From Saccostrea echinata (Eukaryota): a stretch of 64,000 nucleotides of DNA. The notes beneath the pieces are model-generated. The model was not told where the DNA came from. It worked only from the letters and a program-made list of their open reading frames with translations, and did no database searches. Position numbers and translations under genes: made by a program. Shown here piece after piece: positions 10,022 through 61,355 of the stretch. The DNA lies in assembly GCF_033153115.1 (NCBI RefSeq), contig NW_026889759.1, forward strand, positions 7,130,001-7,194,000. The letters run 5' to 3'. The stretch's first letter is position 1, and the number at the start of each line of letters is the position of its first letter.

Positions 10022-11559
10022 AAATTACATGAATTCCATTCACAGATGTTTCATTTTAAGAAAAGAAACAGGTTCATGTAGCACATATATTTAAATCTTT
10101 CAGTAAGTGATCATAAGCTCGTGAACAAAGATTGTGTGGACGTCTGAGTGCTTAAATATTTACTAGAAAATTTTTAAGTTTGTCTTTTCTGAGAGTTAAC
10201 ATAAGAGCGTATAGATGTTTAAAATGTAACTTTAATGTTCTATAATTCATAATGGCGAAAACATGTTTGTTTTTTTAATTCACTGAAATGTTAACATAAA
10301 TAAATGATGGCAAAGTTTTCAAAAATAAAAAAAATAGAATAACTTCATTATTTTTATCATTAATATTAAATTACTCGTATTTTAAGAATAAATGTATTTA
10401 TTAATATGAATAAATAATATATATAAATAAATACATTAAAATATATATTTTATTACGCCTTTTTTCGCCTTAATACACCGTTTGGAAGGGCGTTATTACG
10501 CCGTTTATTTTTTTTTTCACCCATAGATTGTTTTGAACATATTTTATTGATAATCAAAAGGATCAGAAACAAGTTGTATCAACTTACTAGTTCCTCTCCT
10601 TAATATAACACATAATAATTGTTATTCAAAAAGACCCATAGATTGATCCTAATAGGCTTTCGTATGATATGGCCCTTGACTAAATGGACTTCAAATATTT
10701 CTCGGAAAAAATATATTGTGTCATAAAAGGGTATTTTTTAAGGTATAGTGGGTCTTTGCTCCATGTTTTTGTTAACAGAAGAATGTAGATTTTTACACAT
10801 ACTTTAAGTATAATCTCTCAAAAATAAAAAAGGAAGAAAGAAAAAAAGGACTGAAGACCCACTCATATGGAAAGATTGTTTTAGTATCAAGAATTGATCA
10901 TTTTGGCTCTTTTTAGTACATGTATGCTGTTTCATCGACGAATAATTTCAATATTTGTGAGACTGGTGCAATTTGTGGACATGCTGCATAAGTAAGTAAG
11001 TAAATGGTTTATTATGGTGACATGTGTTATGTACAATTACAACAGCAAATATACAAATAACAGGAATTTGAACACCCGGTCCATCGGGAATATATGTCAC
11101 TTTTAACAATATAACATTCAATAAGAATACAGTGACATTACGCATTGTGTTCATTATATATAATAGAATGTCTGTAAGTATATGCTGAGTATATGAATTT
11201 TCCGGTTTGTCTTGGGAAATCTACTTAAAGAAATTTGGTTTTGTCTAAATCTGACATATTGAGATCTATTGATGTATAATCATTAATGTGTACGTCATTG
11301 TAGAATGAAATGTCAAAGAAAATGTTATAATTGAGATGTTATTTTCACTTTCTTATTTGTCGCACAACAGACTTATGTAGTGCCCATTTTGTTCTCCTTG
11401 TTAGCCCATCTTCTTTAAAATCCATTTTCATGCCATAATTATGTAATTGACAAATGCTGGCAGTTCATACTTAGTTCAAAAATAGCTTTTAATAAAATAT
11501 TCCGTTTTGTTCATGGACAATTTTACCGGGATTAGCGTATTTATAGAGGTACATGGACC

Positions 11560-12345
11560 TTATTTATGTTGACAACTTAATTATTTTAATTATATAAATA
11601 ATTATTTGATGACCTGCAACTTATTTATGCTAACATGTAGCTTATTTATGTTGACAAGCGAGATAAATATGTTGACAGGCAACTTACTTACGTTAACATG
11701 CAACTTATTCATGTTAACATGAGAGATAAATAAGTGGGTGTGCAACTTATTTATATATAAACATAAATAAGTTGTATGTTAACAAAATACATGTACTTTG
11801 AATGACCACATGAATAAGTTGCATGTCAACATAAGTTAGTTGCATTTCAACGTAGATAAGTTGCATGTTGACATAAATTATTTGCATGTGAACATAAATG
11901 AGTTACATGTCAAAATATTTAAATTATTTATCTTATATATCAACATAAATAATTACGTTGCATGCAGACATGAATAAGTTGCGACTAGCATGTTGAAAGT
12001 CACATATTGTGGGCATTATATGATGATTTATGAAATTTTTCTAAATTCTTATCTAATCACATTTTTTTGCATGTCAACGAAGTTATGTTATATGTTGACA
12101 TATTAATGCTGCATGCTGACATAATTATCTTGCACGTCGACATAATATACAGAAAAATAACTTGCATATAGGGGGCATAAATATGCCACTATGATTTCTA
12201 TTGATATGTGAGTTACATGTAATTATGTTGAAATACGAACTTATTTATGTTGCATTCGAGATAATTATCTTGATATGCGACATAAATGTCAAGATAATTA
12301 TCTGGCATGCTGATATATAAATATTTTGCATGTCAACATTAATAA
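11560..12345. repeat. Foldback-type element built of ~21-bp degenerate units (consensus ~TTATTTATGTTGACATGCAAC)
   Basis: Units run in one orientation at ~11560-11760 and inverted at ~11760-12170. A related array lies at ~21840-22210. Confidence 0.7.
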
Positions 12346-12833
12346 CGAATTGTATGTTGTTCAACATCCCATTCGAGAATTTTTCACTCATATAAAGATG
12401 TCATCTGCCTCACGTCGTAGCTATGGGAAATATTCTGCGGGACCTTAGTATCAACTTAATATCTTGGATGTAGGGATGATAATAGCACATACTTTTGTTC
12501 CTGTTTCATATGTAAATATGCCACCATGGATATGACAAAGCTCCATTTGAAGTTTTGATCAATATGTCTGCTATGAAATAGGAATCAATATATGTCTCTT
12601 GTTCAAAACATTAGTCTAGATTTCCTAATTCTATGAGTCAAGGTATGTTTTATCCTAACTTTAAGTTGACAAGGCCTTGTTTATGTCGATTTTTTAAAAA
12701 TATTCTGTAATCTCTTTATCTTCAAAAATGCCTATCGTACATCCGGTCTTTTATTCTAAATTAGAGCATTGTGTTGTAGGTGCTATATATATTGATAAGA
12801 ATTACAAGAACCGAAAGTCGGTTTTTCCAAAAT

Positions 12834-13481
12834 ATGAATTCCAAGTGGCTGATAATCGTGTTATTCGTCACTTTGTTTGAAATCATACTTGCTCAACAAA
12901 ACTTCCTACTTGTGGACTCCTGTCCCCAGGACAAAACAGAATGGGATGTCAGACGAGTAAACAAGAGTTATAAGGATCCACCCGATTATCATTGTGCTGC
13001 AATAGAATCAACACAGGAGTTTGGAGAAATTTGTTCATATTCTGCTTTGACATTACCTGGACATTGTCCTGTACTTAATGCTGTATCTCACAATCTCGAC
13101 TTCAAAAATTGCACTTCTTATAAAGAATGTTCGCAAAAAGCATATAGATCGGACGAAATTTACAGGTATTCGATATGTTTCTCAATATTTGGCCGTAATC
13201 TGTCAAATGAAGTGTCATATAACAAGAAGCTTGATGTGTCGCAAGGGAGTGTGGTAGTTTATATATGTGTTTCTAGTATTGCAGTACTAACTGGTTTCGT
13301 TATCTTGCTTGTCTTTATTAAAAGAAAGATAAATAGCAAGAAAAATAGACATCTATCGGATGCAAATAGAAGATTGAATGTGGACAAAAACGTCGACAAA
13401 ATTTTAGGAAAAGCCATTGAAGATATAGAGCTTTCAACACTTCAAAGCCATGCACTGGCTATAGAAGGGAATCAATCATAG
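12834..13481 (+). CDS. Type-I membrane protein, Cys-rich ectodomain family, paralogue 1 (215 aa, single coding exon)
   Basis: ATG at 12834; signal peptide MNSKWLIIVLFVTLFEIILA; ectodomain VDSCP..EW..YHC..EIC..GHCP..NC..EC..YRS.EIY.Y..CF; TM VVVYICVSSIAVLTGFVILLVFI; stop-transfer KRK; ~53-aa tail. Confidence 0.8.
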   Translation: MNSKWLIIVLFVTLFEIILAQQNFLLVDSCPQDKTEWDVRRVNKSYKDPPDYHCAAIESTQEFGEICSYSALTLPGHCPVLNAVSHNLDFKNCTSYKECSQKAYRSDEIYRYSICFSIFGRNLSNEVSYNKKLDVSQGSVVVYICVSSIAVLTGFVILLVFIKRKINSKKNRHLSDANRRLNVDKNVDKILGKAIEDIELSTLQSHALAIEGNQS

Positions 13482-14844
13482 GGATTCTAATGATTTCATT
13501 AAAATAATTGACACTCTTTCAATATATATGTAAAAAAAGATTCCTCTGACATGTAAAATTTGTCACAAAGGTAGTTATGCATTAGTATAAAACTTAATTA
13601 TGAATAAATTTTTAAGATAGTTTATTTATTTATCAAATTGATACACTCCACAAAAAGAAAATAGCTTTCGCTGGCCTAAACAGTACTATTTTTAGTTTAA
13701 AAGTCATGGTTCGTCTTGTTCAGGAACTGCGATGCCATGAGATCAAAACAAAGCTGTGGGAGGATATATATTTTACAAGAATTTCAAAGAAATTCTTATT
13801 TTATTAGCCATGGCAAACCACCTCTCTTTGTCATCAAAAACGGACACAAAGAATTAAATATCTTAGTATAATCGACTTTGGTACGAAGTCTTATTAAACT
13901 GTAGGAGAAGTAGCATTTTGAATCAGTTTAACAAACATTTCTATTTGTAGTAACTATTGGGACATCATTTATTGAAATCGTTTATTGGAAGTCAAAATAC
14001 AATTTACAGAATTATTTATATGGTATAGTCGAGTCTACTTCGGTACAAAATCCTACCGATATTCAGAATTATGTACCTTAGTGTAGTCTACTTGTATGCC
14101 AAGTTTTATTGATATCTGACTAACACTGAAAGAGGAGTAGCGTTTAAAAAAATATTTTCAAACAGAACGGAAGGACAACGGACACCTTTTCAGCGCATAA
14201 GCTCTTCAAGAATTTAACCAGTAGAGCGTAAAAAGAGTCCCTTGAATAGAAATTCCTTGCCAGCACCAACTCGTTACATGAATGCAATTCTCATTAATGA
14301 CCTATTTGAAGAAGCAAAAGTGAGTCCATACTTAAATTCTTCAACTGCAAAATACTAGCTAGTGTTTGTGATTATGAAAGTTTCCTAACACAGACTCTTT
14401 AAGCCACCATGAGTGTCGGAAGATAATTCTGATCCAACCCGTCGGTTACTTAAACTTAAAGGAATAGATGTTGCGAACGTAACATTTTTTAGAATCATTA
14501 AAAAGTTCAGTCTTGCATTCCACCATATTTCAAGTTGAAGTCTACACCTTGTAGTTCCCAAACTTGCTTCCAAACTTTCCAGTTATAAACAAACCTCACA
14601 GTGCCTAGATGTTGAACATCTTTAAAAAAAAATCTTACGTGTTTTTGTGCTTCTCCTTCCTTCAACTACAGTCCTGCTGGAAACTTCAAAACCGGTGATG
14701 TTAACAGTTGAAAATGAAGACCTAAAAGCAATCATCTCAAAAGGTCCTATACAGGGAGCCCCAATCTTTCAACTGGCGACAGAACTTCATTTCTCTGATG
14801 AATTCTGTCGAATATTATGTCAGAAGTTGAGCTAAATATGAAAA

Positions 14845-15158
14845 GGACCAGTGGTAGAATGTTCGCTTCGTGATTGGGAGGCCCGGGTTCGACGCGACTA
14901 AGACGTAAACATAGGTAGTGACTGTTCCTTTGCCAAGCGCCTGGCACTAGAAGTGAAAGTCACCGTTCTTTTTGATGAGACCTAAAAAAACGAGGTCCCA
15001 TGTCACTAAAGGCACAATAAAGAACCCTCACTGTTCAGTAGTCCTGAGTACCGAGTATAGGTCAAAATTTGAAGCCCTTCACCGGTATACGGAGACGTCT
15101 CTATATGAGTGAAAATTTCTCGAATGGGACTTTATACAGCATACGATCAATCAATCAA
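14845..15158 (+). mobile_element. tRNA-derived SINE, near full length
   Basis: Pol III A-box-like (AGTGGTAGAATG) and B-box-like (GGTTCGAC) head; body shared with other copies (CCCTCACTG..AGGTCAAAATTTG..CACCGGT..GAGTGAAAATT.CTCGAA); (CAAT)n tail. Confidence 0.75.
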
Positions 15159-15284
15159 ATATGAAAAGAAAGACCTTAACACTGTGTTAAAATGGATTAA
15201 GTGTTTTGGAAATATATTAAAGAATCGTGCTAGAAAGTTAAATTGCAATATGCGAATCATCTCTCTGTGGCATTAGGTGCTCTC

Positions 15285-15385
15285 ACAAAGACCGTAAGTG
15301 CCGAGAACAGGTCTAAATTTTAGCCCTCCACCGGTACCGTCTCAATATAAATTCTCGAAGGGACTTTAAACAAACAAACAAAAAA
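15285..15385 (+). mobile_element. SINE 3' fragment (same family)
   Basis: AAGTGCCGAG..AGGTCTAAATTT..CACCGGT..TTCTCGAAGGGACTTTAAACAAACAAAC. Confidence 0.55.
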
Positions 15386-15387
15386 AT

Positions 15388-15580
15388 TCTAATGATGAAA
15401 TTCTTCAAAATCACATATCAGTCTTTAATACTTTCAACATTTCAGTTAACCAAGGTGAGTTCGACCTACCCTACCTATACTGGATTCCTAAACTTCATAA
15501 AAAATACATAACTGGGTCCAGCAATTGCTCTACCAAGCCTCTTTATCTACTCTTTACCCTTATATTAACTGCAGTAAAAG
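15388..15580 (+). mobile_element. Degenerate Penelope-like retroelement RT fragment
   Basis: Frameshifted translation gives DEILQNHISVFNTFNI..LPYLYWIPKLHK..GSSNCSTKPL, matching the Y-x-x-P-K-x-H-K motif N-terminal to PLE reverse transcriptases. Confidence 0.55.
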
Positions 15581-16121
15581 TCCTGTTATTTTCTCAGAAT
15601 TGGTCCAGTTATTTTGTCGTAATTGGTCTCACAAGTAAAAAAAATCTCTCTAGGTAACTCTAGTCATTTCTAAATGTACTATGACAAAAATGCTCAAAAA
15701 TCTTAAATTCAGGTTATATCTATAATGCTAAAACAGATTATATCCTTCTTGTAATTAAATTCTTTTGTTTTCCACCTGCAACCTTTTCTGGCTTAGCAAA
15801 CGTAGTTTTTTACCTGTCTTTTTTCCAAAAAATGTTGGCTAAGTGGGAAGACAACAGTCAAAATATTTATCAATATGAATAATGGGTCTGCATAAGATTG
15901 CTAAATCACGTTCAAAATAGAAGTATCAATAGATTCTTGATTGTTTCAAGGTGTACTAACTTTACTTTGACAAGACCTTGTTTGTGTCGAATTTTTAAGT
16001 TTTACCTTCAAAATTACAATTAAATTAGACCTTTACTTTGTGTTATAAGTGCTATTTCGAGTTACAGGTAATGATCAGGAAGCGAAAGTAGGGACTTCCA
16101 AAACATGGTGTACAAGAGATA

Positions 16122-16700
16122 ATGCTTTCAAAACGGGGAATTATTTTAATCGTAACTTGCTTTAGAAGTGTAATCATACATGCTCAACAAAATTTTCTAC
16201 TCGTGGATTCCTGTCCCCAGGACAAAACAGAATGGGATACCAGACGAGTAAACAAGAGTTGTAGGGTTCCACCTGATTACCACTGTGCTGCAATAGAATC
16301 AACACAGGAGTTTGGAGAAATATGTTCATTTTCTGCTTTGACATTACCTGGACATTGTCCTGTACTTAATGCTATATCCCACAATCTTGACTTCAAGAAT
16401 TGCACTATTGATGAAGAATGTCCAAAGAAATCATATAGGTCGGACGAAATTTACAGGTATCCGTTTTGTTTCTCAATATTTAAACCTCGCAAGTGGCCAA
16501 ACATTCCAAATAACGAGGCCGGTGTGAAGGGGAGTATAATTATAATTGTCACCGCTGTAGTTTTCTTCTGTATAACTGTTACTGCTACAAGCGCCATGGT
16601 TATATATTTTATGAGAAAGAGAAATGCAAGTAAAACAGATTCTGAAATACTACTACAAGTACTCCATAAAAAGCAATCTGAGTGCACTTTGCAGCTCTAG
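16122..16700 (+). CDS. Type-I membrane protein, Cys-rich ectodomain family, paralogue 2 (192 aa)
   Basis: Signal peptide; all 8 ectodomain Cys; TM IIIIVTAVVFFCITVTATSAMVIYFM; RKR; short tail containing DSEILL. Confidence 0.8.
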   Translation: MLSKRGIILIVTCFRSVIIHAQQNFLLVDSCPQDKTEWDTRRVNKSCRVPPDYHCAAIESTQEFGEICSFSALTLPGHCPVLNAISHNLDFKNCTIDEECPKKSYRSDEIYRYPFCFSIFKPRKWPNIPNNEAGVKGSIIIIVTAVVFFCITVTATSAMVIYFMRKRNASKTDSEILLQVLHKKQSECTLQL

Positions 16701-18170
16701 AAAATGGAGCTAACATTAATTTTAGTAATCGACTTGAGATATCGAGATTTGACCTGCTTATGCTGCATTAGAGGAAATAATTGACAACAAATTTAAGTCG
16801 CAGTGCACATGTAATGCAGGGACAGCAATTCAGCATGCTCAACATCAAAACCTCAAATTAAAATCTATATGAACATTAAATTGGAGCAGAATATCTAAAG
16901 GGGCATTCAAATGATTTTTGTGGCGATCTATATTCTCTGTCGTTGTTTTATTATTTGATTGTTAATTGAGATAAATTTAAAACTCATCATTGAATGTTAA
17001 CATTATTCTTCTCATCTTTTCTTTCAAAATAAAAATTACAAAAAATGCCTTAAATCAGTTCACATATACATATATCTGTTATGTATGTTTTTGGAAAGTT
17101 TTTTCTGCAGGATTCTGTTCATAATCTCCATATATTTCATTGTAAAGAAAACCAGTTATATCAAGTAATTCTCGTTTTGAAAATACTGATAAATTTTGAA
17201 AAAATAAATGGGTTATGCAAAAGTAAAAAAATTGGTTAACTGATTGATTAATCAAAGTAAAGTTAGTATACCTAATCTACTGAAAAAAGTAAACACTTTG
17301 AACCCCTTCCTCGGCTTCAGTCTAGTAGCTGGGACCACATATTGTACGAATACTGAGTATTTTACAATCGTATGTGATACCAGTGAATATAAATATGAGG
17401 TATAGTCGTTTCTCTTTATAAGAAAAGGTGTATGGAAATTTCCTTTATGGCATGTATGTTCCAAATGTTGGAATTTTTTAAAATTGTGGCCGTTCTTTGC
17501 AGTGGCTAATCTTTAGCCAGAATTCCGTATGAGGCCTAGTATATTTATAACTTCCTTTTCATATGAGTAAAACTTTTTTTAAAAAGACTTTGTCGTCTTG
17601 GTATAAACACCCTTGAAAAGTTCACTGAAATAAACTTACCAGGCCGTATTATTCTTGTATAATTTTTGCAACGACTTTTTTTTCAGACATTAGTCTTACC
17701 ATTTGAAAGACAATGTCAAAAATAAACAAATAAATAAATAAAATAACTGAATTTTAAAGCAATTTGAGCTGAATTTTTGACCTTTTTATTTTGCTGTTAA
17801 AATGTGCTCCTATGCTAAATCTGTATGTAACTTACACCTTTATGATCGATTAGACTAAAATAAGCATTCATTTGTTTCAGAAGAAAGATTTCTTTACAAA
17901 GGAATGTAAAGTATTATATAAGAAATTAATATTGTACAGGACAACAATAATGTAATTTTGCTTCAATCAAAGCTTAAAATTACTGTTTCCATCACATATA
18001 TAAACAATAGAGGTTTATAAAAGTTCTTTTATCTGTCATTGAAATACTTAATTACAATATTGCAACAAACATTTCCGACATCAAAGTTGAAGCTCATATT
18101 GCTTTAACGTTTTCGTGTAAAAAAAATTAAGAACATTCCTTTCTTTTTTTATAATGAAAATATGAAACAC

Positions 18171-18570
18171 TTTTTGCTCACCTGTGGTGAAAGCTCAAGT
18201 GAGCTTTTCTGATCACCCGTTGTCCGTCGTCTGTCTGTCTGTAAACTTTTCACATGTTCACCTTCTTTGCAAGAACCAATAGGCAATTTTTTTTTGGTAC
18301 AAAGCATCCAACGGTAAAGGGAATTCTAAATTGTTAAGATGAAGGGCCAACCCCCAACTAAGGGGAGAAAGACAAGAAAAGGCAAAAATAGGGTGGAATT
18401 ATTAAGAAATCTTCTTCTTAAGAACCACTGGACCAAAGAAAATGAAACTTATGTGGAAGATTCTTGAGGTAGTGTAGACTTTAAATTGTTCAAATCATAT
18501 CCCCTGGGGTTATGGTGGGACCAGAATGGGGAATCAAAGTTTTACATTGAAATATATAGGAAAAAATTCA
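18171..18570 (+). mobile_element. Helentron-associated non-autonomous element (HINE) fragment with Cg170/HindIII-like ~166-bp satellite units
   Basis: 5' end TTTTTGCTCACCTG..AAAGCTCAAGTGAGCTTTTCTGATCAC followed by a GTCC/GTCT microsatellite, then two AAGAACCA.TGG..AAATTGTT units ~170 bp apart. Recognised from the known oyster HINE architecture. Confidence 0.7.
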
Positions 18571-19990
18571 TATATGGCGTTTTTTTTTTATAAGTTCAGA
18601 CTTAGTAAAATTAAAAAGATCTTTCTATTTGTTTTATTACTTTATATAAAGATAGAACTTTCCTGTAAATTACACAAATTAAATCAAACACGTTTCAAAG
18701 ATATTAGAAATTCAAAACAATATCCGATTTATTTACCGACTCCGCATTTAATTAACAGACACAGTTTAAGGGGGGGGGGGGTCGGGAAAAAAAACCCGCC
18801 CAATCAAAAAAAATTTTTTTACAAGTGTCATTTTAACAATATTTTTCATAAATGAGACTCTATCCAAGCCCATTGTTTCACACAAAAGGTGAAATATACA
18901 GCCACCACGTTAAGACAATCCCTTTCCGCTTGAGCGCACACAATACACAGGTAATCAGCAACTTACATCATCTCAAGCCACGGTCCGGAGTCCGCATATA
19001 GCTCTCTCTACCCATGGCCAGAATGGGAGAGGATCGTACATTTTGGCCGTGGTTTGCGACGATGTCAGCAGTATGGAGATCATGATAGTCTGTGCAGCTA
19101 GTGATGACACAAGGCCATATTATACTAACAACCAAGAACTGCACATAGTTGATATTAGGGTATTGTTTTGGTATCGCTAAAATATTATTCTTGCAAGAAT
19201 TTTCTTCTTTCTTCGATAATTGAATGTTACGTTATTGAACTACGTGAATAAACTGTGATTATTATTTTTTTTTAAATTATTACAATCAGGGACGTATATA
19301 CTATATATACATCCATGATACAATATTTTCATGACATAATCAGGTTGCTTTTACCTCTGGGAAAGTAGGCTCTTCTAGTAATAACGGTTTACCAGTTGTT
19401 TACGTTTTGACCTGTACCAAAAAGGACATTGAAAATGTACCTTTTGTAGATGGAAGTTACAATGCAATTAAAAGCCTTCCTATAGTATTTTCCATAGTAA
19501 ATTATCCTTCAGATGCTGGTTGCCCCCCCCCCTTTTTTTTTTTTGCTTGTCAAATAATTTTGGGAACGTAACATTCAATTATCGAAGAAAGAAGAAAATT
19601 CTTGCAAGAATAATATTTTAGCGGTGTACACATGTACATTAAAGCCACATGTATATATATATGGCGTATCTGAGCTAAAAAATAAAAACACGAGATTGAG
19701 CATAGATAAACATGATATATGTTATTTCCGTTCAAATTAAACTTTTCACCGATTTTGAACTTGAATAACCCCATGTTTCCGTAGTTAAATTAACTTTAAA
19801 CTGTGTCTGTTATTTAAATGCGGAGTCAGTAAATAAACCGGTTATTGTTTTAAACTAATATCTTTGAATCGTGATTGATTTAAATTGTGTAATTTACAGG
19901 AAAGTCCTATCTCTATATAAAGTAATAAAACAAATAGAAAGATCTTTTTAATTCTAGTTAGTCTGAACTTATACAAAATACGCCATATAT
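18570..19990. mobile_element. Foldback element with ~200-bp outer inverted repeats and ~55-bp inner inverted repeats
   Basis: 18570-18769 is the reverse complement of ~19797-19990. 19177-19232 is the near-perfect reverse complement of 19566-19622. Confidence 0.7.
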
Positions 19991-21839
19991 GGCTTTTAAG
20001 TGATTGGGGTATCTGGCCATCAGTATATCCGGCACACTCGGGGTGGACATCTCTTATCCTCAATTCCTCTTAAAATTGCAAATTTATGCTATTTAATATA
20101 AAATCTTTAATACAAACTGCCTTAATATAAGCACCTGTTATTTTACGTTTCCATCGGAATCGGGGTTTCCCAGTATCCATCTTTCAGCACTCGGTTGGCT
20201 CGGTTGTGACAACAGGTGTGACCCCTAAAAGAACCCTATATGTCCAAAGGCCATATGAGTCTAGCATACACCTGTATATTTCGAAGTAAGAACCCTTGAT
20301 AAAACTGCTTTCAAATTCATGAAGTTGTTTAACGAATCTATAATTATAAAGAAAACAAAAAAAAAAAAGTTAATTATCATGCTTTAACATGTATGACGTC
20401 ATATAGATGATTAATATGCTCCAGGAACAGAAAATGTCTTATTAGAGTTCAATATATTCAAAATTATTGATGTTTAATGTTTAAATAAAAATATTACTTC
20501 AAAGCAACAAAACTAAAAATTTAGTCATATTTCGTACTTTGGGGGTTGGGGTGAAAAGCGGGGGGAGGGGGGGGGGGTATTGTCCTTTTTTGATTTCCTT
20601 ACTTCTGTTTATACATGTACATGCATCTGTCATAACATTGCCTGATTGTACTTTATGAAAAAAAAACCCTGTACATCAGCACTGAATTAAATCTACTCCA
20701 AAACAATTAATTTTACGGACAGACATACGGACATTATAGTTCAAATTTTCTTTACTTTTCTGTGAAATCGATATTTTCACTGTAAAAATCAATTTTCCAT
20801 AAAAATTTATTGCAAATCCGAGAAATTTTATGAATTTCTTAAGCTTTTTTAACATGTTCATCATTATGGTCAAATTTCAATCATTGATCTTTAACCTCTT
20901 ATTATTTTAAATTTTGACCATAGAATTTTCTACGACTGGAAGAAAATAATTGCTTATTAATATACCTTTCCAAAAAAAGTACAAATTGGCCGTAGGGTAG
21001 GGTGGTGCATTAATTTCAAAATGTTGATGGTCTTGTCACTCCACTATTGGTGGAACGTGTGTTCTGGTGTGTTTTAAAGACATCAAATGTAAAAGAAGCA
21101 GATTTCCTGGGAAATTAACATAAAGTATGTGAAAAGAATGCATTATCTAATGAAAATTTGGACAATTTTTAAATCCTGTTTTGTGGAAGAAGTCAATTCT
21201 CTTGTGATACTTAAAATAATTACAGACAAATGCTGCAAACAAACCTTTTCAAAAAATCATGAAAACAACTACTTTCATGTTTTTAGAAGTAAAATGAGTA
21301 AGTTTAGCCGCATAAAGTTTATTTTTTATATTTAAAAAAAAATCTCAATTATTTCTTACAATGAGAGAAAAACATAGATTTAAAAGGGTGATGCCAAAAG
21401 GGAAGAAATTAAAATACAGAAAATTTACATTTAAAAAAAATATTTTAGAGATTTAAAATATGCACCATTTGGAACCAAAACAAAGGGTAAAATGTACAGG
21501 TATACCAAACCACGGATTCACGTTATTTCTGTTTGTAAGTCATGTGCATGTCCCTAAGCAGCCTAATTCTAGTAATTAAACTGATTGTGAGTGACATACA
21601 TGTATCTTGTGGGCCGGGTGTAAGAAACTAAGTATACCATAATTGTATCAACACGCATGTCACATTTATAAATAATATACTTACTTACTTACTTACATGT
21701 ACACACAGCCGTTTATTTTTTCATCAGAAGTGTTTCTTTTAAACATTTATTAAAATTTTGAAGTGATTGCTTCAAAATAGAGTACATACTGGTTTTGTTG
21801 CATTAGAAATGTACACCAAAGAAAAAGTTCAGGCTTGCC

Positions 21840-22210
21840 TAACATGTCAAGGAGTGAGGGGCATGTCGAGAAAATCAAGTAGCATCTCAACAAAATTATC
21901 TCGCATGGTGAGAAAAATAGGTCGCATGTCAACATATATGTTGCTTGTTAACATTAGTCTCATCGCAACATGTTTTATGTCGGCTTTGCATGCTGACATA
22001 AAAAAGTCGTGTGTCAACATTATTATATGGTGTATCTTGTATGTGATATCAAGTGGTGGCGCTAATGAGTATATTCACTAGCATCAAGATAATATTTTTA
22101 AAACATAATTAGTTACTTGGATGTCAACTTATATTTTGTAGGAACATCCATGCATGTAGATGTAATCTTGCATGTTGACATATTTTTCTCGCATGTAAAT
22201 ATGCCACTTA
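21840..22210. repeat. Degenerate copy of the ~21-bp-unit repeat, upstream of receptor paralogue 3
   Basis: GCATGTCAAC/GCATGTTGAC units ending in GTAAATATGCCAC, as also seen upstream of paralogue 1. Confidence 0.6.
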
Positions 22211-22542
22211 AGATGTAGCAAACTTTTCATTTGAAGTTCTGATCAATATGTTTTCAAAGAATCTAGATATCTTTTTCAAAATAGTGCAGTTTAGATTTAT
22301 GGATTCTGTGACTCAAGTTGGGTTTTTAATTCTTAAGATTAATTTAACAAGGTCTTGTTTGTGTCGTTTATTTAAATATTCTTTTTTTACCATCAAAAGC
22401 ACAATTACTAGTATATCCGACCTTTAATTATATGAGTTCGAGCTTTGCGTTGTATTTGCTATTTAAATAAAACGGAGAATCATTGGAATAAGATGTAATT
22501 ACACAAAACAAAAGTAGTGTGGTTTTACGGGATCCAGGAAAA

Positions 22543-23126
22543 ATGCTTTCAAAACGGGGAATCATTTTAATTGTAATTTGGTTTGGAAGTGAAATCATAC
22601 ATGCTCAACAAAACTTTCTTCTTGTGAATTCCTGTCCCCAGAACAAAACAGAATGGGATACCAGGCGAGTAAACAAGAATTGTAAGGATCCACCCGATTA
22701 TCATTGTGCTGCCATGGAATCAACACAGGAGTTCGGAGAAATCTGTTCAGATTCTGCTTTGACATTACAAGGATACTGTCTACTTAATGTTGTATCTCAC
22801 AATCTGGATGAGGGATGTCCAAAAAACATCATATCGTTCGGACGAAATTTAGAAGTATCCGTTTTGTTTCTCAATATTTAAGCAGAGTAATGAGTCGAAC
22901 AAAGTGCCAAATAACAAACATTTATTGGGGGTTTGATGATCATCATTTTGGTTTGTATCGTTATAGTTACAGCAATAATGTTATATTCTTTTTGAGATAT
23001 TAAAGAAAGAAACAAAACAAGGAAAATCATGGACCTCATGGAGAAATCGCCGGTCAGCCCTCATTAGTACAAGCCAGCGAAGACAGAGCAGAATATATGC
23101 AACATTTGCAACCTGTTTCTTTCTGA
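22543..23126 (+). pseudogene. Receptor paralogue 3, pseudogene
   Basis: Signal peptide and first half of the ectodomain are intact. Lesions: a 3-nt and a 21-nt deletion, +1 A in the run at 22821-22826, TAC>TAG at 22850, and further frameshifts. The TM remnant FIGGLMIIILVCIVIVTAIML (from 22921) and the tail RKKQNKENHGPHGE..EYMQHLQPVSF* lie in different frames. Confidence 0.8.
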
Positions 23127-24797
23127 AGTAAAAATATTTGTACTACTGAAGAAGAAATAGTTGAGTAAATATTTGTTATAGTTTAGTTGTATCAGATGCC
23201 TACTGGGAATACATCTGACCCGGCAAACACTCGTTCAAGTAATGTTAATAAAATTAACCACCTTCTAATTTATGCATTGTCTATAATTTTCTGTTTCATA
23301 GTTTCTTTCGTAAGGTATTAAAATAAAATTTATGTATGCTTTCTATTGTCTACTGGATTGAAATCTGATGATAAACCTCCTTTTTCTTCTTGCAATGGAA
23401 AATTATTCTTAATATGTTTAATTTATAGTATATTACAGTACCATTCTTAGTGATTAGATATTCGTCCCGATTGAAGTGGTGTAGATTATTTTTACGATTG
23501 ATTGAAATGTACATGGTTTTAATTATCTTATGTTTCCGAGTTTATTAAGGCTTTTATCGATGGACAACAATTTTAACATTAAAGAAATACCTGCGGGGAC
23601 ACAGACGGAAGTGGCCAGTAATGCGTCAGGCATCCGAACTGCCACATACAATATAGATATTAGTATATAAAAGAGTTCTTTGACAACAAATAACAAATTG
23701 AATGACAAAATGACATATGTTGAGTAAATTACAATCTGTGAAAAGTTTTGATAAGATAAACATGAAAGAAAGATAAATAAAATAATTACCTGAATGTTTC
23801 TATATGGTATAACAAATTAGTGATAGGGGTTAACACTTTAACAATTTGTAGTATTCAGTATTTCGTAGTCTGACAATAAATAAAGATTAAGAATTAATCT
23901 CGGTGAAAATAACTGATAAAACATAATTAAGTTCAAAATAAAAGTTCAAAATAAGATTTGTAAAAAGAGTCAACTCTGCACGGTGATACATTGTAAAACC
24001 TTTTAAATTGCAACCATATTCTGACCCTCGTTGCCATTGTAAAAAAAAAGTTTTACAAAATCAGACATAAAAAATGATAAAAGATGATGTAAGGCATGTA
24101 CGTTCATGAGATATTATAAATAATACTATTTTTACTTCTGCACAAATCCATATAAAGTAACTGTTTTGAAAGAATTAAAGAACATTTCATATTTTCTCCA
24201 TAATTCTTGCTAAGATTTTCACGTCTTCTGACGAATTAGTGTTTTAGAGATTAATGTTCTTTTTGATGTTCAATGTATCTTAAATAAAATTTATTCTAAA
24301 CAAAGCATATGATCATTTATTATCATTCATGGAAATTTGAATCGGAATACAAGAAGTAAGCTAATCCTCTATATCCTTATGTATACTCCCTCTCTTGCCT
24401 TGGTATTCCCAAACTGAAAATTAACATTTTTAAAAAAGGAGAGGTTCCTTGGAATGAAAATACCAGGTACCTTAACCAAATATTCTAAGACATATGTGCT
24501 TTCGTAAAGCATTTCGTCATATACAAATAGGCCCGCAAAAAGATTACTAGCGTTCAAAATACAATGGTGCAGATTGTTCTGTTTCTATGTAGCAAGGTGG
24601 GTGTGTACTAACTCTAAATCAGCAGAATCTTATTTATATGAAATTATCACGTTTATCAGTTTGATTTGTAGGTGCTATTTTTATATACACGTATAGGTAG
24701 CAGGAACCGAAAAAAGATTTCATTAGATTTTTTTTTACCATAATTTTTCTTCGTTTAAATGATAGTTGTGCCGATTCGTGTGACAAGAGATGAGATA

Positions 24798-25373
24798 ATG
24801 CCTACAAAAGGGGGAATCGTGTTAATTGTCACTTGGCTTGTAAGTGAAACAATACTTGCACAACAAAACTTTCTACGAGTTGATTCGTGTCCAGAAAACA
24901 AAACAGAATGGGATACGAGAGGAGCAAACAAAAACTGCACTGATCCACCCGATTATCACTGTGCTGCAATAGAATCAACACAGGAGTTCGGAGAAATCTG
25001 TTCACATTCTGCTTTGACATTACCTGGATATTGTCCTGTACTTAGTGCTGTATCTCACAGTCTGGGCTTCAATAATTGCACTTTGGATAAAGGATGTCCA
25101 AAAACATCATACCGTTCGGACAAAATTTACAGGTATCCGTCTTGTTTCTCAGTATTTAAGAGCCACCGGTCGAATGTACAAGATAACGCCACAATTCATT
25201 TCACCGTGATTTTGACTATTTTTGGCAGTTCAATAATCAATATTCCTATCATTATCATCGTGTTTATACTATGTAAAAGAAGGGCAAGAATACGAGCATT
25301 AGACAGTAATCAAAGAGAAACGCACAAAAAGGAACTTCAAAATACACACACAGGACGTAAATTAGTTGATTAA
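24798..25373 (+). CDS. Type-I membrane protein, Cys-rich ectodomain family, paralogue 4 (191 aa)
   Basis: ATG at 24798 aligns with the paralogue starts (MPTKGGIVLIVTWLVSETILA); 8 Cys; TM FTVILTIFGSSIINIPIIIIVFIL; KRRAR; ~33-aa tail. Confidence 0.8.
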   Translation: MPTKGGIVLIVTWLVSETILAQQNFLRVDSCPENKTEWDTRGANKNCTDPPDYHCAAIESTQEFGEICSHSALTLPGYCPVLSAVSHSLGFNNCTLDKGCPKTSYRSDKIYRYPSCFSVFKSHRSNVQDNATIHFTVILTIFGSSIINIPIIIIVFILCKRRARIRALDSNQRETHKKELQNTHTGRKLVD

Positions 25374-26437
25374 AAATATGGAGTTAAGGACCCTCTCTAC
25401 ACCAGTGCAGAATGTGTTTTGGACATTGAGAAAATTACATTGAATAAAGGTGTAAATATTGAGCTTATCTATTTAATTTTCAATATATGGTGCGTGGCAT
25501 TTACCCCCAGGAAAAATGTTCAAACACAACACAGTATCAGTGAACAGAAATCACTGTTGTTTATTTCCATGGAGAACATACATGTAAATAATGTGTTCAA
25601 TTATTTATCTTGGCCTTTTAAAATGTTAAGAATACTTGAATTGATTAAAAATTGAGTAAGTGCCAATCCGGTTATGTAAGTTATCTCACTTTCCGTGCAT
25701 TTTAAGGAAAAAAAAAGATTTTCCTAGAAGCAACAAAGGATTTTTTATTCAACACTAGAAAGATATGAGTAATCTAAAACAGCACTGGATCATTGATTTA
25801 CTAAATTTCTGAATACAGAACTGTTATGTAAATACATATAAATGATAAGATTTGTAATAAAAAAAAATCATTTTAAATTGTCTAAATAAATTACTCAAAA
25901 TGTTTTCTCCTTTATACAGCGGATATAGCTCATAGGATATCGTTTTCATATCCAAGGTTGTGACGTCATAATGGTTTTTGCCTGAATTTGATCAAGTCAA
26001 ATATTGTCTATTTACATAAATAAGACAGTGTTAAACATGAAATAGGTATGTGTAAGACGTGTGATAAAAAGAATCTCCCATGGCTTGTGGTTGGATAAGA
26101 TTTTTATATCCAGCGTGTTTGTTTATAAATCCCATCGCCAAAGCTCTGGGATAAAAACACACAACTCGTTGCCCAACTACAAACCATGGGAGATCCAATA
26201 TATATTTAGTGTGAATTGTATATATTAATGATCTTTACACGGAATGTTTCGTAGCCCTATAGTCTAGGTATGGACATTTCCTACCTTCCCATGCACGAAA
26301 ACCGTACCATACAAATAAAACTAATCGTATCAAACAAATTCAGAATCGTGGTCCCCCGCCTTTGGGAACCTTTTGGTTGGGGTATAATGAACTATGGCTT
26401 ATTGTAACTGTCTTGTCTGTCCATCATGCTTAAAAAA

Positions 26438-26438
<1 letters not shown>

Positions 26439-26517
<79 letters not shown>
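26439..26517. repeat. (TA)n microsatellite
   Basis: About 39 TA units. Confidence 0.95.
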
Positions 26518-26520
<3 letters not shown>

Positions 26521-27312
26521 GGATGGCAATCGAATACAGAATTGCTAATCGATTAACCACAAGACGTTCCGACCGCTTAACCAGTTAACCGTATCAAAAT
26601 ACGCATTTTCTTGATGTACATACTTTTTTCCTAGGTAGCTCTATTCATATATATAAAAAGAAGACTGATAGAGTCTAGATGTTAAATCATTTTATTTGTC
26701 TTGATTCTTGATTTTTTTAAAAACCCACATGCTTCTATATTTTATTTTAGTTTCAATGTAGACTGGAAAAAAATAAGAAAACCACGAATCATGACTGAGA
26801 AATCATTGATATTTTTCCAAAGCAGATTTCACATACGTTCATTCAGCATTGTCACCATAATTAAAAGTCTGAAATACATCACTTATAATTTACAAAGTTT
26901 GTGTAGTAATTTATTCGATAGATAACTGCAAAAAAAAAAAAAACAAACATAGTAATTCGCAGTTTTTAACGGTGATTTAATTATCATTAAAGAAATACAA
27001 GGACAGTCAGGGTAACGACATGGTGTTTTAACAGTAATTAACACTTCAAACACAAAATGACCAATTACCCTATCTATCCGGAAAACCATAATTACATCCA
27101 AGTCACCTTGGATATGTGAAAACGCTGAATTATCAGCGTTTATGCAAAGATCTCTTTTTCAAAAAATAAATAAATAAATAAATTAACAAACAAAATTAGT
27201 TTCAAATTTATGTATATTTTTTTTATTTTTCCGACTAACCGATTACAGATTTTCTAACCGATTGTCATCGTTCCGACCGAGTAATCGGTTAACCTGTTAC
27301 AAATTGTCATCC

Positions 27313-27315
<3 letters not shown>
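26518..27315. mobile_element. hAT-like MITE embedded in a (TA)n array
   Basis: TIR TAGGGATGGCAAT / ATTGTCATCCCTA; subterminal AACCGA/CGATTA repeats; TA arrays on both sides. Confidence 0.75.

Positions 27316-27383
<68 letters not shown>
27316..27383. repeat. (TA)n microsatellite
   Basis: About 34 TA units. Confidence 0.95.
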
Positions 27384-27385
<2 letters not shown>

Positions 27386-27933
27386 CTCTAGACCCTCGGC
27401 TATCATCTAGGCAAGTCAAAAAACTTGCTTTCGATGCCGATGCAATGGAATTCTCGCGGCGCTGGTCTACACTACACGGTCATTGAGAATGGAAGTGAGA
27501 TACAGTTATTTGGACATTAGTTTTATTAGAGGATCGTTACCAATACACGTTGTAATGAAATTATTTTTTCTTTATAAAGCACATTTTACAACAACTCTTA
27601 AACTAACATAACTGCCCTAAGTGAATACCCTAGAAGGCGAGGTGCCATAACGCCCGTTACCAATTTAGGTGTGTAGCACCCAATGATTGTTAAATGCTTG
27701 TCTGACATTTGTCATTGAAACAATTATTAAAGCTGCGGCCTTTTATCATCCAAAAACATCGTTTATCATAAGTGAATAATAAAATGGGATAAATACTATC
27801 ATCATAGAACAAGGGCCATGAATTTCACAATTTTGGAAAAAGTGTTCTTTCTCATCTTGACCTTGCACTTAGTTTCTCTGCTAAATTTTAAAGAGAAGTG
27901 GAAAGGATGTTCAAAGAACTGATACATTTTTAC

Positions 27934-61073: not shown

Positions 61074-61355
61074 CTGAAAGCAGCACAGTATGAATATACC
61101 TTCCATACATATTTGAAAAACTACACGTGTATTTATTTTGAATTTTAAAAAATGAGTTTACTAAGCTAAACAATGTCGTAAAACTTTGAATCACAGTCAA
61201 AACGTGACCAACTTAGCACACGAATAACATGAATAAATTCTTGAGACTATTTATAATCATTTTGTTAAAAAGGCACCGAGTACACATATAAGGTATATGC
61301 TATCCCGAAAGCCTGCAATCATTCATTAAATTGGCTTTAATTTAAATGACACAAG

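What the first reader, a model, noticed from the sequence alone, without database searches (positions are those of the whole stretch)
12834..25373. Tandem receptor array with a near-constant Cys-rich ectodomain but unalignable stalk, TM and cytoplasmic tails
Seen: four co-oriented paralogues (12834, 16122, 22543 pseudogene, 24798), each with signal peptide, ~95-aa 8-Cys ectodomain, one TM helix and a short tail. DNA similarity is very high across the ectodomain (e.g. TGTGCTGCAATAGAATCAACACAGGAGTT is identical in copies 1, 2 and 4). It stops abruptly at the same point in all four copies, right after TGTTTCTCA(A/G)TATTT (C-F-S-I/V-F). Downstream the copies cannot be aligned by eye, yet each keeps a TM and basic stop-transfer motif. 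This reverses the usual variable-ectodomain immune-receptor pattern and resembles paired receptors with one ligand and different outputs. From memory, the CP..EW..C..YHC..E.C..CP..Y.S..Y..C domain is an unnamed family expanded in bivalves. Inference: gene conversion homogenises the sensor domain while tails diverge or are swapped, forming an undescribed paired/decoy receptor system.
Basis: partly seen in the sequence, partly recalled or inferred. Interest (0 to 1): 0.78.

Follow-up and report, generated by a model that had tools for sequence, protein, structure and literature searches.

The report
Oyster receptor genes with mismatched halves
Four neighbouring oyster genes (one broken) encode small membrane proteins whose outer, cysteine-rich domain and promoter stay similar while the membrane anchor, tail and surrounding DNA no longer align, most likely because the front half was copied between neighbours in the past.

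Summary
Four co-oriented, intronless genes sit at 12834, 16122, 22543 (pseudogene) and 24798. DNA identity is 83-90% without gaps across the ~99-residue ectodomain and collapses within 0-45 nt after TGTTTCTCA(A/G)TATTT.

"Near-constant" is overstated. Ectodomain dS is 0.28-0.43 and dN/dS 0.26-0.33. Copy 1 has lost one conserved Cys.

The similar part is an island running from about -300 to the end of the ectodomain. Tails and spacers do not align, and each tail is unique in the 923-Mb genome. Relationships disagree between segments: flanks pair c1 with c3, the signal peptide pairs c2 with c3, the ectodomain pairs c1 with c2. The c2-type tail is shared with Saccostrea cucullata.

I favour past interlocus gene conversion of the 5' block plus purifying selection (confidence 0.5). 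The main rival is young duplicates with fast tail decay (0.3).

Paired-receptor hallmarks are absent: no cytoplasmic Tyr, no charged TM residue.

The ectodomain belongs to a large unnamed oyster family:
- 134 cluster representatives and at least 151 exon matches in this genome.
- No Pfam family and no PDB fold match.
- Other members carry cytoplasmic nSTAND3, HEPN_DZIP3, ankyrin or AIG1 modules.

Contigs that look like transcripts cover c1 and c2 unspliced. This is a new variant of a known evolutionary pattern, of moderate interest.

The parts
12834..13481 (+). c1: intact intronless gene, 215 aa. Signal-like N-terminus, ectodomain 12894-13190 (7 Cys; Tyr replaces the second conserved Cys), stalk, TM and tail 13191-13478.
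   Evidence: ORF. Alignments. Hydrophobic segments at residues 1-27 and 135-167. Contigs of runs X1-X4 cover 12797-13538 and cross the breakpoint unspliced.
16122..16700 (+). c2: intact intronless gene, 192 aa. Ectodomain 16185-16481 (8 Cys), stalk, TM and tail 16482-16697. This tail type is shared with S. cucullata P0001-P0003.
   Evidence: tail z 23-27 against P0001-3. AF2 pLDDT 85 for the whole protein and 92.5 for the ectodomain alone. One contig covers 16121-16900.
22543..23030 (+). c3: pseudogene. The signal peptide is c2-like (54 of 60 nt). The ectodomain has a 3-bp and a 21-bp deletion and a +1 frameshift. The tail remnant has stops and is weakly collinear with the c1 tail.
   Evidence: 13195-13225 against 22887-22917 at 77%; 13316-13346 against 22998-23027 at 81%.
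24798..25373 (+). c4: intact intronless gene, 191 aa, the most divergent copy. Ectodomain 24861-25157 (8 Cys), stalk, TM and tail 25158-25370, which has no relative anywhere.
12534..12833 (+). Promoter-proximal and 5'UTR block of c1, homologous to 15822-16121 (c2), 22243-22542 (c3) and 24498-24797 (c4). It includes a conserved 47-nt element at 12656-12702, 15957-16003, 22334-22380 and 24609-24655.
   Evidence: Pairwise identity 68-78% with gaps, z 2-31. Repeat family D5.
11751..12150 (+). 21-nt tandem repeats upstream of c1, found again at 21901-22027 upstream of c3. They mark the longer flank homology that only c1 and c3 share.
   Evidence: Repeat family D3. blastn of 21640-21954 against 10974-12339, E down to 1.7e-7. 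For -600..-301, c1-c3 gives z 5-6 and all other pairs z<1.
18584..19978 (.). Inverted-repeat element (124-nt arms, 93% complementary) inserted in the c2-c3 spacer.

Best explanation
These are real genes, probably transcribed, for small type-I membrane proteins: three intact and one recently broken. Each has a signal peptide, one ~99-residue four-disulfide ectodomain of a large unnamed oyster family, a short stalk, one TM helix and a 28-53-residue cytoplasmic tail with no known domain.

The array is old. Its spacers, 3' flanks and tails have diverged beyond alignment. The block from about -300 through the signal peptide to the end of the ectodomain was copied between neighbours by interlocus gene conversion (non-reciprocal recombination) at several times in the past. 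Silent-site divergence in that block is now 0.28-0.43. Since then the ectodomain has been held by purifying selection (dN/dS about 0.3).

The 3' edge of the similar block sits at the end of the folded domain. Beyond it only hydrophobicity and a basic anchor are needed, so homology there was already too low to carry a conversion tract.

Inferred function: ligand-binding surface proteins without a signalling module of their own. They would act as co-receptors or decoys for relatives that couple the same ectodomain to cytoplasmic nSTAND3, HEPN, ankyrin or AIG1 modules.

Shown: the anatomy, family membership, the island of similarity, and discordant relationships along the unit. Inferred: conversion as the cause, and the function.
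For: 1. Island of similarity. The ectodomain is 83-90% identical and the proximal upstream 68-78%. Tails and the next 600 nt are at shuffle level. Spacer blastn gives nothing above a reversed-sequence control except the c1/c3 upstream.
2. Silent sites in the ectodomain are the least diverged of the unit. Third-position p is 0.15-0.22 in all 6 pairs, against 0.22-0.32 for the aligned proximal upstream.
3. With the substitution and indel rates of the upstream block, tails should still align at z 17-40. Observed z is 0-4. No simulation of 60 fell as low in 5 of 6 pairs; for c1-c4 the fraction was 0.08.
4. Discordant kinship.
   - Only c1 and c3 share far-upstream sequence.
   - The signal peptide pairs c2 with c3 (54 of 60).
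   - The ectodomain pairs c1 with c2.
   - Counts of informative sites for the three groupings c1c2|c3c4, c1c3|c2c4 and c1c4|c2c3 are 4/15/6 upstream, 1/0/4 in the signal peptide and 6/1/1 in the ectodomain. Permutation p is 0.0006.
5. Cross-species comparison.
   - The c2 tail aligns with S. cucullata P0001-3 (z 23-27) but not with c1 or c4 (z 3.4 or less).
   - Yet in ectodomain residues 1-70, c2 differs from c1 at 6 sites and from P0001-3 at 16.
   - In residues 71-99 the pattern reverses: 8 against 3-4.
   - Change-point permutation p is 0.046, 0.024 and 0.008.
   - The ectodomain tree groups copies by species, not by tail type.
6. Each tail is unique in the genome.
7. Contigs from 2 studies cover only the gene bodies, run continuously across the breakpoint, and leave unique intergenic DNA uncovered.
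8. Family context. There are 134 representatives. Among 141 scanned members, 12 carry nSTAND3, 5 HEPN_DZIP3, 2 ankyrin repeats and 1 AIG1.
Against: - No formal test is decisive.
   - The AU test does not reject a tail-type clade for the ectodomain (dlnL 13.2, p 0.10).
   - Support for the species clades is weak (74/26 and 63/0).
   - The protein run test has a best p of 0.021 among 28 pairs, not significant after correction.
- dS does not rise towards the tail. For c1-c2 it is 0.26 against 0.36. For c1-c4 and c2-c4 it is lower in residues 71-99. The cross-species switch may therefore reflect faster amino-acid change in c1, whose dN is 0.044 against 0.147 and which lost a Cys.
- The upstream alignment that feeds the site-pattern test has many gaps, and c4 is nearly unalignable there.
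- The proximal upstream may be constrained as a promoter, so it may understate the neutral rate.
- The runs are labelled RNA only as a guess.
- Nothing tests the proposed function.
Confidence: 0.5

Rival explanations
1. Young whole-gene duplicates. All four copies arose from a c2-type ancestor about dS 0.3-0.4 ago, after the split from S. cucullata. The ectodomain and proximal promoter are kept by selection. In c1, c3 and c4 the stalk, TM and tail lost constraint, or were driven to change, and decayed by substitutions, indels and frameshifts. Spacers were replaced by repeat turnover. No conversion is needed.
For: - Ectodomain dS (0.28-0.43) roughly equals the JC distance of the aligned proximal upstream (0.26-0.41).
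- The ectodomain tree groups copies by species.
- No orthologue of the c1 or c4 tail was found elsewhere.
- The c1 tail keeps weak similarity to the c2 type: BLASTP E 0.006 and shuffle z 2.5-3.4.
- Between the window and ~96%-identical contigs, the listed tail changes are mostly non-synonymous (12 N to 3 S in c1). The c2 tail carries about 20 nt inserted and 3 nt deleted before the stop.
- dS is not higher in the last third of the ectodomain.
- Spacers hold repeats.
Against: - At these divergences, tails and spacers should still align (simulation). No remnant was found in 1.9-5.8 kb spacers except for c1/c3.
- c1 is nearest to c2 in the ectodomain, yet shares flanks only with c3.
- Site patterns switch between segments.
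- Across species the c2-type tail stays alignable at greater ectodomain divergence (80% against 86% identity). The decay would therefore have to be lineage-specific and faster than neutral.
Confidence: 0.3
2. Old duplicates held only by purifying selection. The ectodomain's low silent-site divergence reflects constraint on synonymous sites (codon use, mRNA structure) rather than any exchange.
For: dN/dS is 0.26-0.33 and the ectodomain has no indels. The sharp edge coincides with the end of the folded domain (AF2).
Against: - Third positions are only 15-22% different while the surrounding DNA is unalignable.
- The non-coding proximal upstream is also retained.
- Kinship differs between segments.
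- The pseudogene c3 is as similar as the intact copies.
Confidence: 0.1
3. Artefact: chance ORFs or an assembly duplication, with no real genes.
For: None found. The window's proteins are absent from the protein database.
Against: - Tails of 71-96 codons are open in an AT-rich genome. I estimate a stop frequency of about 0.076 per codon from base composition; this estimate comes from no call.
- Each tail has a TM segment.
- Annotated S. cucullata homologues exist.
- Contigs from two independent studies match c1 and c2.
- The copies differ by 10-17%.
Confidence: 0.02

Closest known systems
Vertebrate paired receptors whose ectodomain exons are homogenised by gene conversion: Siglec-11/Siglec-16 (PMC5701461), CEACAM families (PMC2832619, PMC7042247), CD300A/CD300C (PMC12447643). 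I saw only the search listing and the start of each abstract.
   Same: Neighbouring paralogues with similar extracellular parts and unrelated TM and cytoplasmic parts. Exchange between copies is limited to the 5' part.
   Different: The domain is neither Ig nor lectin. The genes are intronless. There is no ITIM, ITAM or charged TM residue. Similarity is only 83-90%, so any exchange is old. The animal is a mollusc, and neither ligand nor signalling is known.
Crassostrea virginica expansion of receptors with a constant N-terminal cysteine-rich extracellular domain and TM helix, then DED and TRADD-N, then a variable C-terminus (Death-like, STAND NTPase, HEPN, AIG GTPase, ankyrin). Kaur, Iyer, Burroughs and Aravind, eLife 2021, PMC8195603. 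I read section 10 and the matched passages.
   Same: Oyster lineage-specific expansion. A Cys-rich ectodomain and one TM helix are joined to variable cytoplasmic parts. The partner domains found here in relatives (nSTAND3, HEPN_DZIP3, ankyrin, AIG1) are on that paper's list.
   Different: The window copies have only short tails. No DED or TRADD-N was detected in the 8 long relatives scanned at E<=1. Whether the Cys-rich domain is the same could not be checked, because the text gives no sequences and supplements are closed.
Uncharacterized proteins LOC134247284, LOC134266252, LOC134247326 and LOC134247274 of Saccostrea cucullata (P0001, P0002, P0003, P0005).
   Same: Overall identity 51-67%, ectodomain identity 66-81%, and the same architecture. 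Three of them lie on one contig. P0001-3 share the c2-type stalk, TM and juxtamembrane segment.
   Different: Another species. P0005 has a 179-residue part after the ectodomain of another type. No counterpart of the c1 or c4 tails was found.

Membership tests
Unnamed oyster Cys-rich ectodomain family (consensus CP-x4-EW ... C ... YHC ... E-x-C ... G-x-CP ... C ... CP-x3-Y-x-S-x-E-x-Y-x-YP-x-C) | Significant sequence match to family members | tested here: met
   phmmer with c2 found 134 representatives at E<=0.001 and 17 at E<=1e-10. The family profile A6 hits c2, c4 and c1 at E 3.6e-47 to 1.5e-42.
Unnamed oyster Cys-rich ectodomain family | The conserved cysteines and the CP/W/YHC motif columns (at least 90% conserved in 141 sequences) | tested here: met
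   Nearly invariant columns are C31, P32, W38, C47, C55, C68, C79, C94 and C116. c2 and c4 have all of them. c1 lacks the C47 equivalent (Tyr), and c3 lost the C94 equivalent by deletion.
Unnamed oyster Cys-rich ectodomain family | Type-I architecture: N-terminal signal, ectodomain, single TM helix | tested here: met
   Kyte-Doolittle segments. AF2 gives a helix at residues 136-191. 100 of 134 representatives have a hydrophobic segment after residue 60. The signal peptide was not tested with a dedicated predictor.
Paired activating/inhibitory immune receptors (KIR, Siglec, CEACAM, CD300 type) | Inhibitory member with ITIM or ITSM tyrosine motifs in the tail | tested here: not met
   c1 and c4 have no Tyr in the last 60 residues. 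The only Tyr of c2 (residue 162) lies inside the hydrophobic segment 131-165.
Paired activating/inhibitory immune receptors | Activating member with a charged residue in the TM helix for adaptor pairing | tested here: not met
   Reading the tail sequences printed shows no K, R, D or E inside the hydrophobic segments.
Paired activating/inhibitory immune receptors | Ectodomains kept alike by gene conversion while TM and tails differ | tested here: inconclusive
   For. Not significant.
Transmembrane STAND receptors of this ectodomain family (ectodomain, TM, nSTAND3 with or without HEPN_DZIP3 or ankyrin) | Cytoplasmic nSTAND3 (PF20720) or HEPN_DZIP3 (PF18738) domain | tested here: not met
   No such hit in c1, c2 or c4 at E<=10. 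Present in relatives: 12 and 5 of 141.
C. virginica Cys-rich ectodomain, TM, DED, TRADD-N expansion (Kaur et al. 2021) | Intracellular DED plus NCOA6-clade TRADD-N module | tested here: not met
   The window tails are 28-53 residues with no Pfam hit. None was found in 8 long relatives at E<=1. Whether the ectodomain is the same is not testable here.
WAP four-disulfide core (PF00095) | Score at or above Pfam's gathering cut-off | tested here: not met
   15.7 and 14.3 bits against a cut-off of 20.8, over 25 of 41 profile positions.
Processed retrogene | Loss of the parental introns | tested here: met
   Only the four window copies match the domain plus TM in one ORF. The other matches are split into N-half and C-half exons (150 of 633 candidates were scored). 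In L005 the exon ends at ELYK followed by gtaagg.
Processed retrogene | Poly(A) remnant and target-site duplications at each copy | not tested
   Homology reaches 180-300 nt upstream of the ATG, beyond the contig starts at 12797 and 16098. The four copies therefore arose by DNA duplication of an already intronless gene.

The most novel reading that the evidence does not exclude
The ~99-residue four-disulfide ectodomain is a fold with no solved counterpart. It serves as the shared extracellular sensor of a large oyster family of transmembrane NLR-like receptors (ectodomain, TM, then STAND NTPase, HEPN RNase or ankyrin).

The intronless short-tailed array is a retrogene-derived set of decoys or co-receptors. 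Repeated gene conversion keeps its ligand-binding half matched, while the membrane and cytoplasmic halves are free to diverge. This would be an invertebrate, non-Ig counterpart of vertebrate paired receptors.
Probability: 0.15. Interest if true: 0.75.

Novelty: new variant of a known kind. Interest (0 to 1): 0.42.

Why it matters
Bivalves have very large, poorly understood innate-immune gene expansions. This locus is a compact, tractable example of one. It holds three intact ~600-bp intronless genes from a family of more than a hundred members whose ectodomain has no name, no Pfam model and no structural match. Elsewhere that ectodomain is wired to STAND NTPase, HEPN, ankyrin or AIG1 modules.

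If the conversion reading holds, domain-limited concerted evolution of a sensor with free-running anchors is not restricted to vertebrate Ig and lectin receptors. The short genes would also be convenient reagents (ectodomain-Fc fusions) for finding the ligand of the whole family.

If the rival holds, the locus is an ordinary case of a constrained domain next to unconstrained linker, TM and tail sequence.

Tried and rejected
- **Pfam.** c1, c2 and c4 gave only sub-threshold hits: WAP, NB glycoprotein and TM-like families.
- **Tail-only protein searches.** Searches for c1 and c4 found nothing. They need shared 5-mers, so the blank is weak.
- **c4 tail against P0005.** My shuffle z was 9.2, but BLASTP with composition correction gave E 0.46. 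I rejected it as an orthologue.
- **Downstream homology.** A weak candidate about 700 nt after c2, c3 and c4 (z 2.8-3.8) did not survive alignment; the stretch is A-rich with no convincing blocks.
- **Tail donors.** None exists elsewhere in the genome.
- **Fold searches.** On the whole model, the VIA-align search was dominated by the long TM helix and the Foldseek search of the same model gave nothing at E<=0.001. The ectodomain alone gave nothing by Foldseek (best E 2.0) and no chain with Z>=2 by VIA-align wide. Small disulfide-rich domains are hard for these tools, so this does not prove a new fold.
- **PDB sequence search.** It matched only ErbB2 TM peptides.
- **ESM Atlas.** It returned unnamed Mollusca clusters at scores of 0.93 and 0.91.
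- **Ancient exon junction as the breakpoint.** In relative L005 the intron lies before the YPxCF motif, about 8 codons upstream of the breakpoint, so the match is only approximate. I read these exons separately and did not join them.
- **Earlier notes of the scan.** Two were found on this window, neither bearing on this locus.
- **Literature.** Four searches found no paper on this subfamily. The supplements of PMC8195603, which may list accessions of its Cys-rich receptors, were closed and not seen.

Full report
**What is there**

The window is AT-rich (GC 0.27-0.38) and is C10:7130001-7194000 of a 923-Mb, 425-contig assembly. Homologues and neighbours point to an oyster. The best protein hits are "uncharacterized" proteins of Saccostrea cucullata, S. 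echinata and Crassostrea virginica. The window also holds intronless B-box/NHL ORFs.

- c1 at 12834-13481, 215 aa.
- c2 at 16122-16700, 192 aa.
- c3 from 22543.
- c4 at 24798-25373, 191 aa.

c3 is a pseudogene. It has a 3-bp and a 21-bp deletion in the ectodomain, the latter removing a conserved Cys. A one-base insertion shifts the frame, and the tail frame has stops.

c1, c2 and c4 each have a hydrophobic N-terminus, a ~99-residue Cys-rich domain, a short stalk, one hydrophobic segment (residues 135-167, 131-165 and 131-163) and a K/R-rich start to a 28-53-residue tail.

**The observation**

- The quoted 29-mer is exact in c1, c2 and c4 and has two mismatches in c3.
- The end motif occurs once per copy.
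- Ectodomain DNA identity is 83-90%, with no gaps among the intact copies.
- The 200 nt after the motif align at shuffle level (z -0.3 to 3.8), and so do the next 600 nt.

The edge is sharp but not a single point. Traces continue for 35-45 nt. c1 and c3 are 77% identical over 31 nt, and all four share an ATAAC.

"Near-constant" is too strong:
- Amino-acid identity is 74-86%.
- NG86 dS is 0.28 for c1-c2 and 0.42-0.43 against c4.
- dN/dS is 0.26-0.33.

c1 has a Tyr at the second conserved Cys. It also has Ser for Pro in a CP motif; the ~96%-identical contigs from other samples carry Pro there.

**Are they genes, and are they expressed?**

Five runs from two studies hold small shares of the stretch. 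I laid four of them on 12600-16900.

- Their contigs cover 12797-13538 and 16098-16900, plus two very deep repeats at 14040-14183 and 15048-15191.
- They leave the unique intergenic bins at zero.
- Contigs cross the ectodomain/tail junction without a joint: 12986-13242 with 0 differences, 13076-13478, and 16121-16900.

The runs are labelled "RNA?" as a guess. Gene-limited coverage is what a transcript assembly gives, so I take c1 and c2 as probably transcribed and unspliced. This is not proof.

**The family**

- Pfam has no model for the domain.
- phmmer against 1.84 billion representatives found 134 proteins at E<=0.001.
- Of those 141 members, 12 carry nSTAND3, 5 HEPN_DZIP3, 2 ankyrin repeats and 1 AIG1 after the TM helix.
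- 100 of 134 representatives have a TM-like segment. Of these, 53 have 80 or fewer residues after it and 27 have more than 200. Short tails are therefore the commonest form, although some of these may be fragments.
- A family profile finds 151 exon-level matches in this genome (150 of 633 candidates scored). They form large clusters, for example on C14 at 12.3-12.7 Mb.
- Only the four window copies match the domain plus TM in one open frame. The rest are split into an N-half and a C-half exon (example L005).
- The array is therefore an intronless sub-lineage. It probably descends from a processed copy that was then duplicated as DNA, because the copies share sequence upstream of the contig starts.

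AlphaFold2 gives a confident alpha/beta model of the ectodomain (pLDDT 92.5, pTM 0.83). Foldseek on PDB gives no hit better than E 2.0. VIA-align against 48,161 chains gives none with Z>=2. A PDB sequence search matches only TM peptides. This leaves the fold unmatched, not proven new.

**Why the two halves disagree**

I weighed three readings.

*(a) Same age everywhere, with the ectodomain simply constrained.* The silent sites argue against this.
- Third-position differences in the ectodomain are only 0.15-0.22 in all six pairs.
- That is less than the aligned proximal upstream (0.22-0.32).
- Tails, 3' flanks and 1.9-5.8-kb spacers show nothing above a reversed-sequence control.
- Simulating the tails with the substitution and indel rates of the upstream block predicts alignment z of 17-40. 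Observed z is 0-4. No simulation of 60 fell as low in five of six pairs.

*(b) Young duplicates with fast tail decay and spacer turnover.*
- Tails do evolve freely. Against the ~96%-identical contigs, the listed differences in the c1 tail are 12 non-synonymous to 3 synonymous.
- The c2 tail has about 20 nt inserted and 3 nt deleted before the stop, which shifts the distal frame.
- The c1 tail keeps a faint likeness to the c2 type (BLASTP E 0.006).

*(c) Old units whose 5' block was exchanged.* Kinship differs along the unit.
- Only c1 and c3 share far-upstream sequence. This includes a 21-nt tandem repeat and faint collinear tail matches.
- The signal peptide pairs c2 with c3 (54 of 60).
- The ectodomain pairs c1 with c2.
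- Informative sites for the three groupings c1c2|c3c4, c1c3|c2c4 and c1c4|c2c3 split 4/15/6 upstream, 1/0/4 in the signal peptide and 6/1/1 in the ectodomain. Permutation p is 0.0006.
- Across species, the c2 tail aligns strongly with S. cucullata P0001-3 (z 23-27) but not with its own neighbours.
- In ectodomain residues 1-70, c2 differs from c1 at 6 sites and from P0001-3 at 16. In residues 71-99 it is 8 against 3-4.
- A change-point test that allows for the choice of split gives p 0.046, 0.024 and 0.008.
- The ectodomain tree groups copies by species rather than by tail type.

Results against (c):
- The AU test does not reject a tail-type clade (p 0.10).
- A run-length test on the proteins is not significant after correction (best p 0.021 among 28 pairs).
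- dS does not rise towards the tail. The c1-c2 contrast may therefore partly be faster protein change in c1.
- The upstream alignment is gappy, and the proximal promoter may be constrained.

On balance I put (c), with purifying selection, at 0.5. I put (b) at 0.3, (a) at 0.1 and an artefact at 0.02. No tail has a second copy in the genome, so "swapping in" of tails is not supported.

**Function**

Nothing here tests it. The tails have no Pfam domain, no Tyr and so no ITIM or ITAM. The TM segments have no charged residue. The vertebrate paired-receptor definition is therefore not met.

By architecture these are ligand-binding surface proteins without a signalling module. Relatives couple the same domain to STAND, HEPN, ankyrin or AIG1 modules, so a co-receptor or decoy role is the most economical guess.

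**Comparison with what is known**

Domain-limited conversion between receptors with different tails is well described for Siglec-11/16, CEACAMs and CD300A/C. I saw these papers only as listing and abstract starts.

Kaur et al. 2021 (PMC8195603; section 10 and passages read) describe a C. virginica expansion. It has a constant Cys-rich extracellular domain and TM helix, followed by DED and TRADD-N and then variable STAND, HEPN, AIG or ankyrin parts. The partner list matches what I see in relatives. However, I found no DED or TRADD-N in the 8 long relatives scanned at E<=1. I could not check whether the Cys-rich domain is the same, because supplements are closed.

Takeuchi et al. 2022 (PMC9646362; passages read) document HEPN_DZIP3 and NACHT expansions in a pearl oyster. 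I use it as context only.

Four literature searches found no paper on this subfamily.

**Limits**

No S. cucullata DNA was available, so all cross-species tests are on 99-residue proteins.
- P0004 comes from an unnamed Logan contig, and its species is unknown.
- The signal peptide was not tested with a dedicated predictor.

**Verdict**

The discontinuity is real. The family is large, unnamed and linked to immune-type modules. Past conversion of the 5' block is the best-supported cause but is not proven. The paired-receptor reading fails its defining tests. This is a new variant of a known pattern, of moderate interest.

Noticed in passing
window 18584-18707 and 19855-19978: 124-nt inverted repeat, 93% complementary, 1147 nt apart, in the c2-c3 spacer. 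Mirrored ORFs at 18526-18855 (+) and 19842-20063 (-) overlap the arms. It looks like a transposable-element insertion and would account for the longer c2-c3 spacing (6421 nt against 3291 and 2255).
   Followed up: partly
window 11751-11923, 12109-12150 and 21901-22027: 21-nt tandem repeats (TTGCATGT.AACATAA...) found only upstream of c1 and c3.
   Followed up: partly
window 14040-14183 and 15048-15191: Contig depth in the thousands in runs X1, X2 and X4, and lower in X3, with many joints and loose ends. These are dispersed, probably transcribed repeats in the c1-c2 spacer. One of them also occurs inverted at 12349-12402.
   Followed up: no
window 31124-32833 (-) and 59334-61106 (-): Two long intronless ORFs (569 and 590 aa) with B-box zinc finger and NHL repeats. 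They are TRIM-like genes without a detected RING domain.
   Followed up: partly
window 12969-12971 and 13131: The window's c1 has Tyr at the family's second conserved Cys and Ser in place of Pro in a CP motif. Contigs from other samples carry Pro at the latter site. c1 may be losing constraint or may form an intermolecular disulfide.
   Followed up: partly
window 16610-16680: In ~96%-identical contigs from two studies, the c2 cytoplasmic tail has about 20 nt inserted and 3 nt deleted before the stop. The distal tail is therefore read in another frame in those animals.
   Followed up: partly
G000 C14:12.33-12.73 Mb: A dense cluster of more than 25 exon matches to the same ectodomain family, several with in-frame stops. 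It is the largest cluster of the family in this genome.
   Followed up: no
window 26420-26520 and 27310-27390: Two long (TA)n tracts about 800 nt apart.
   Followed up: no
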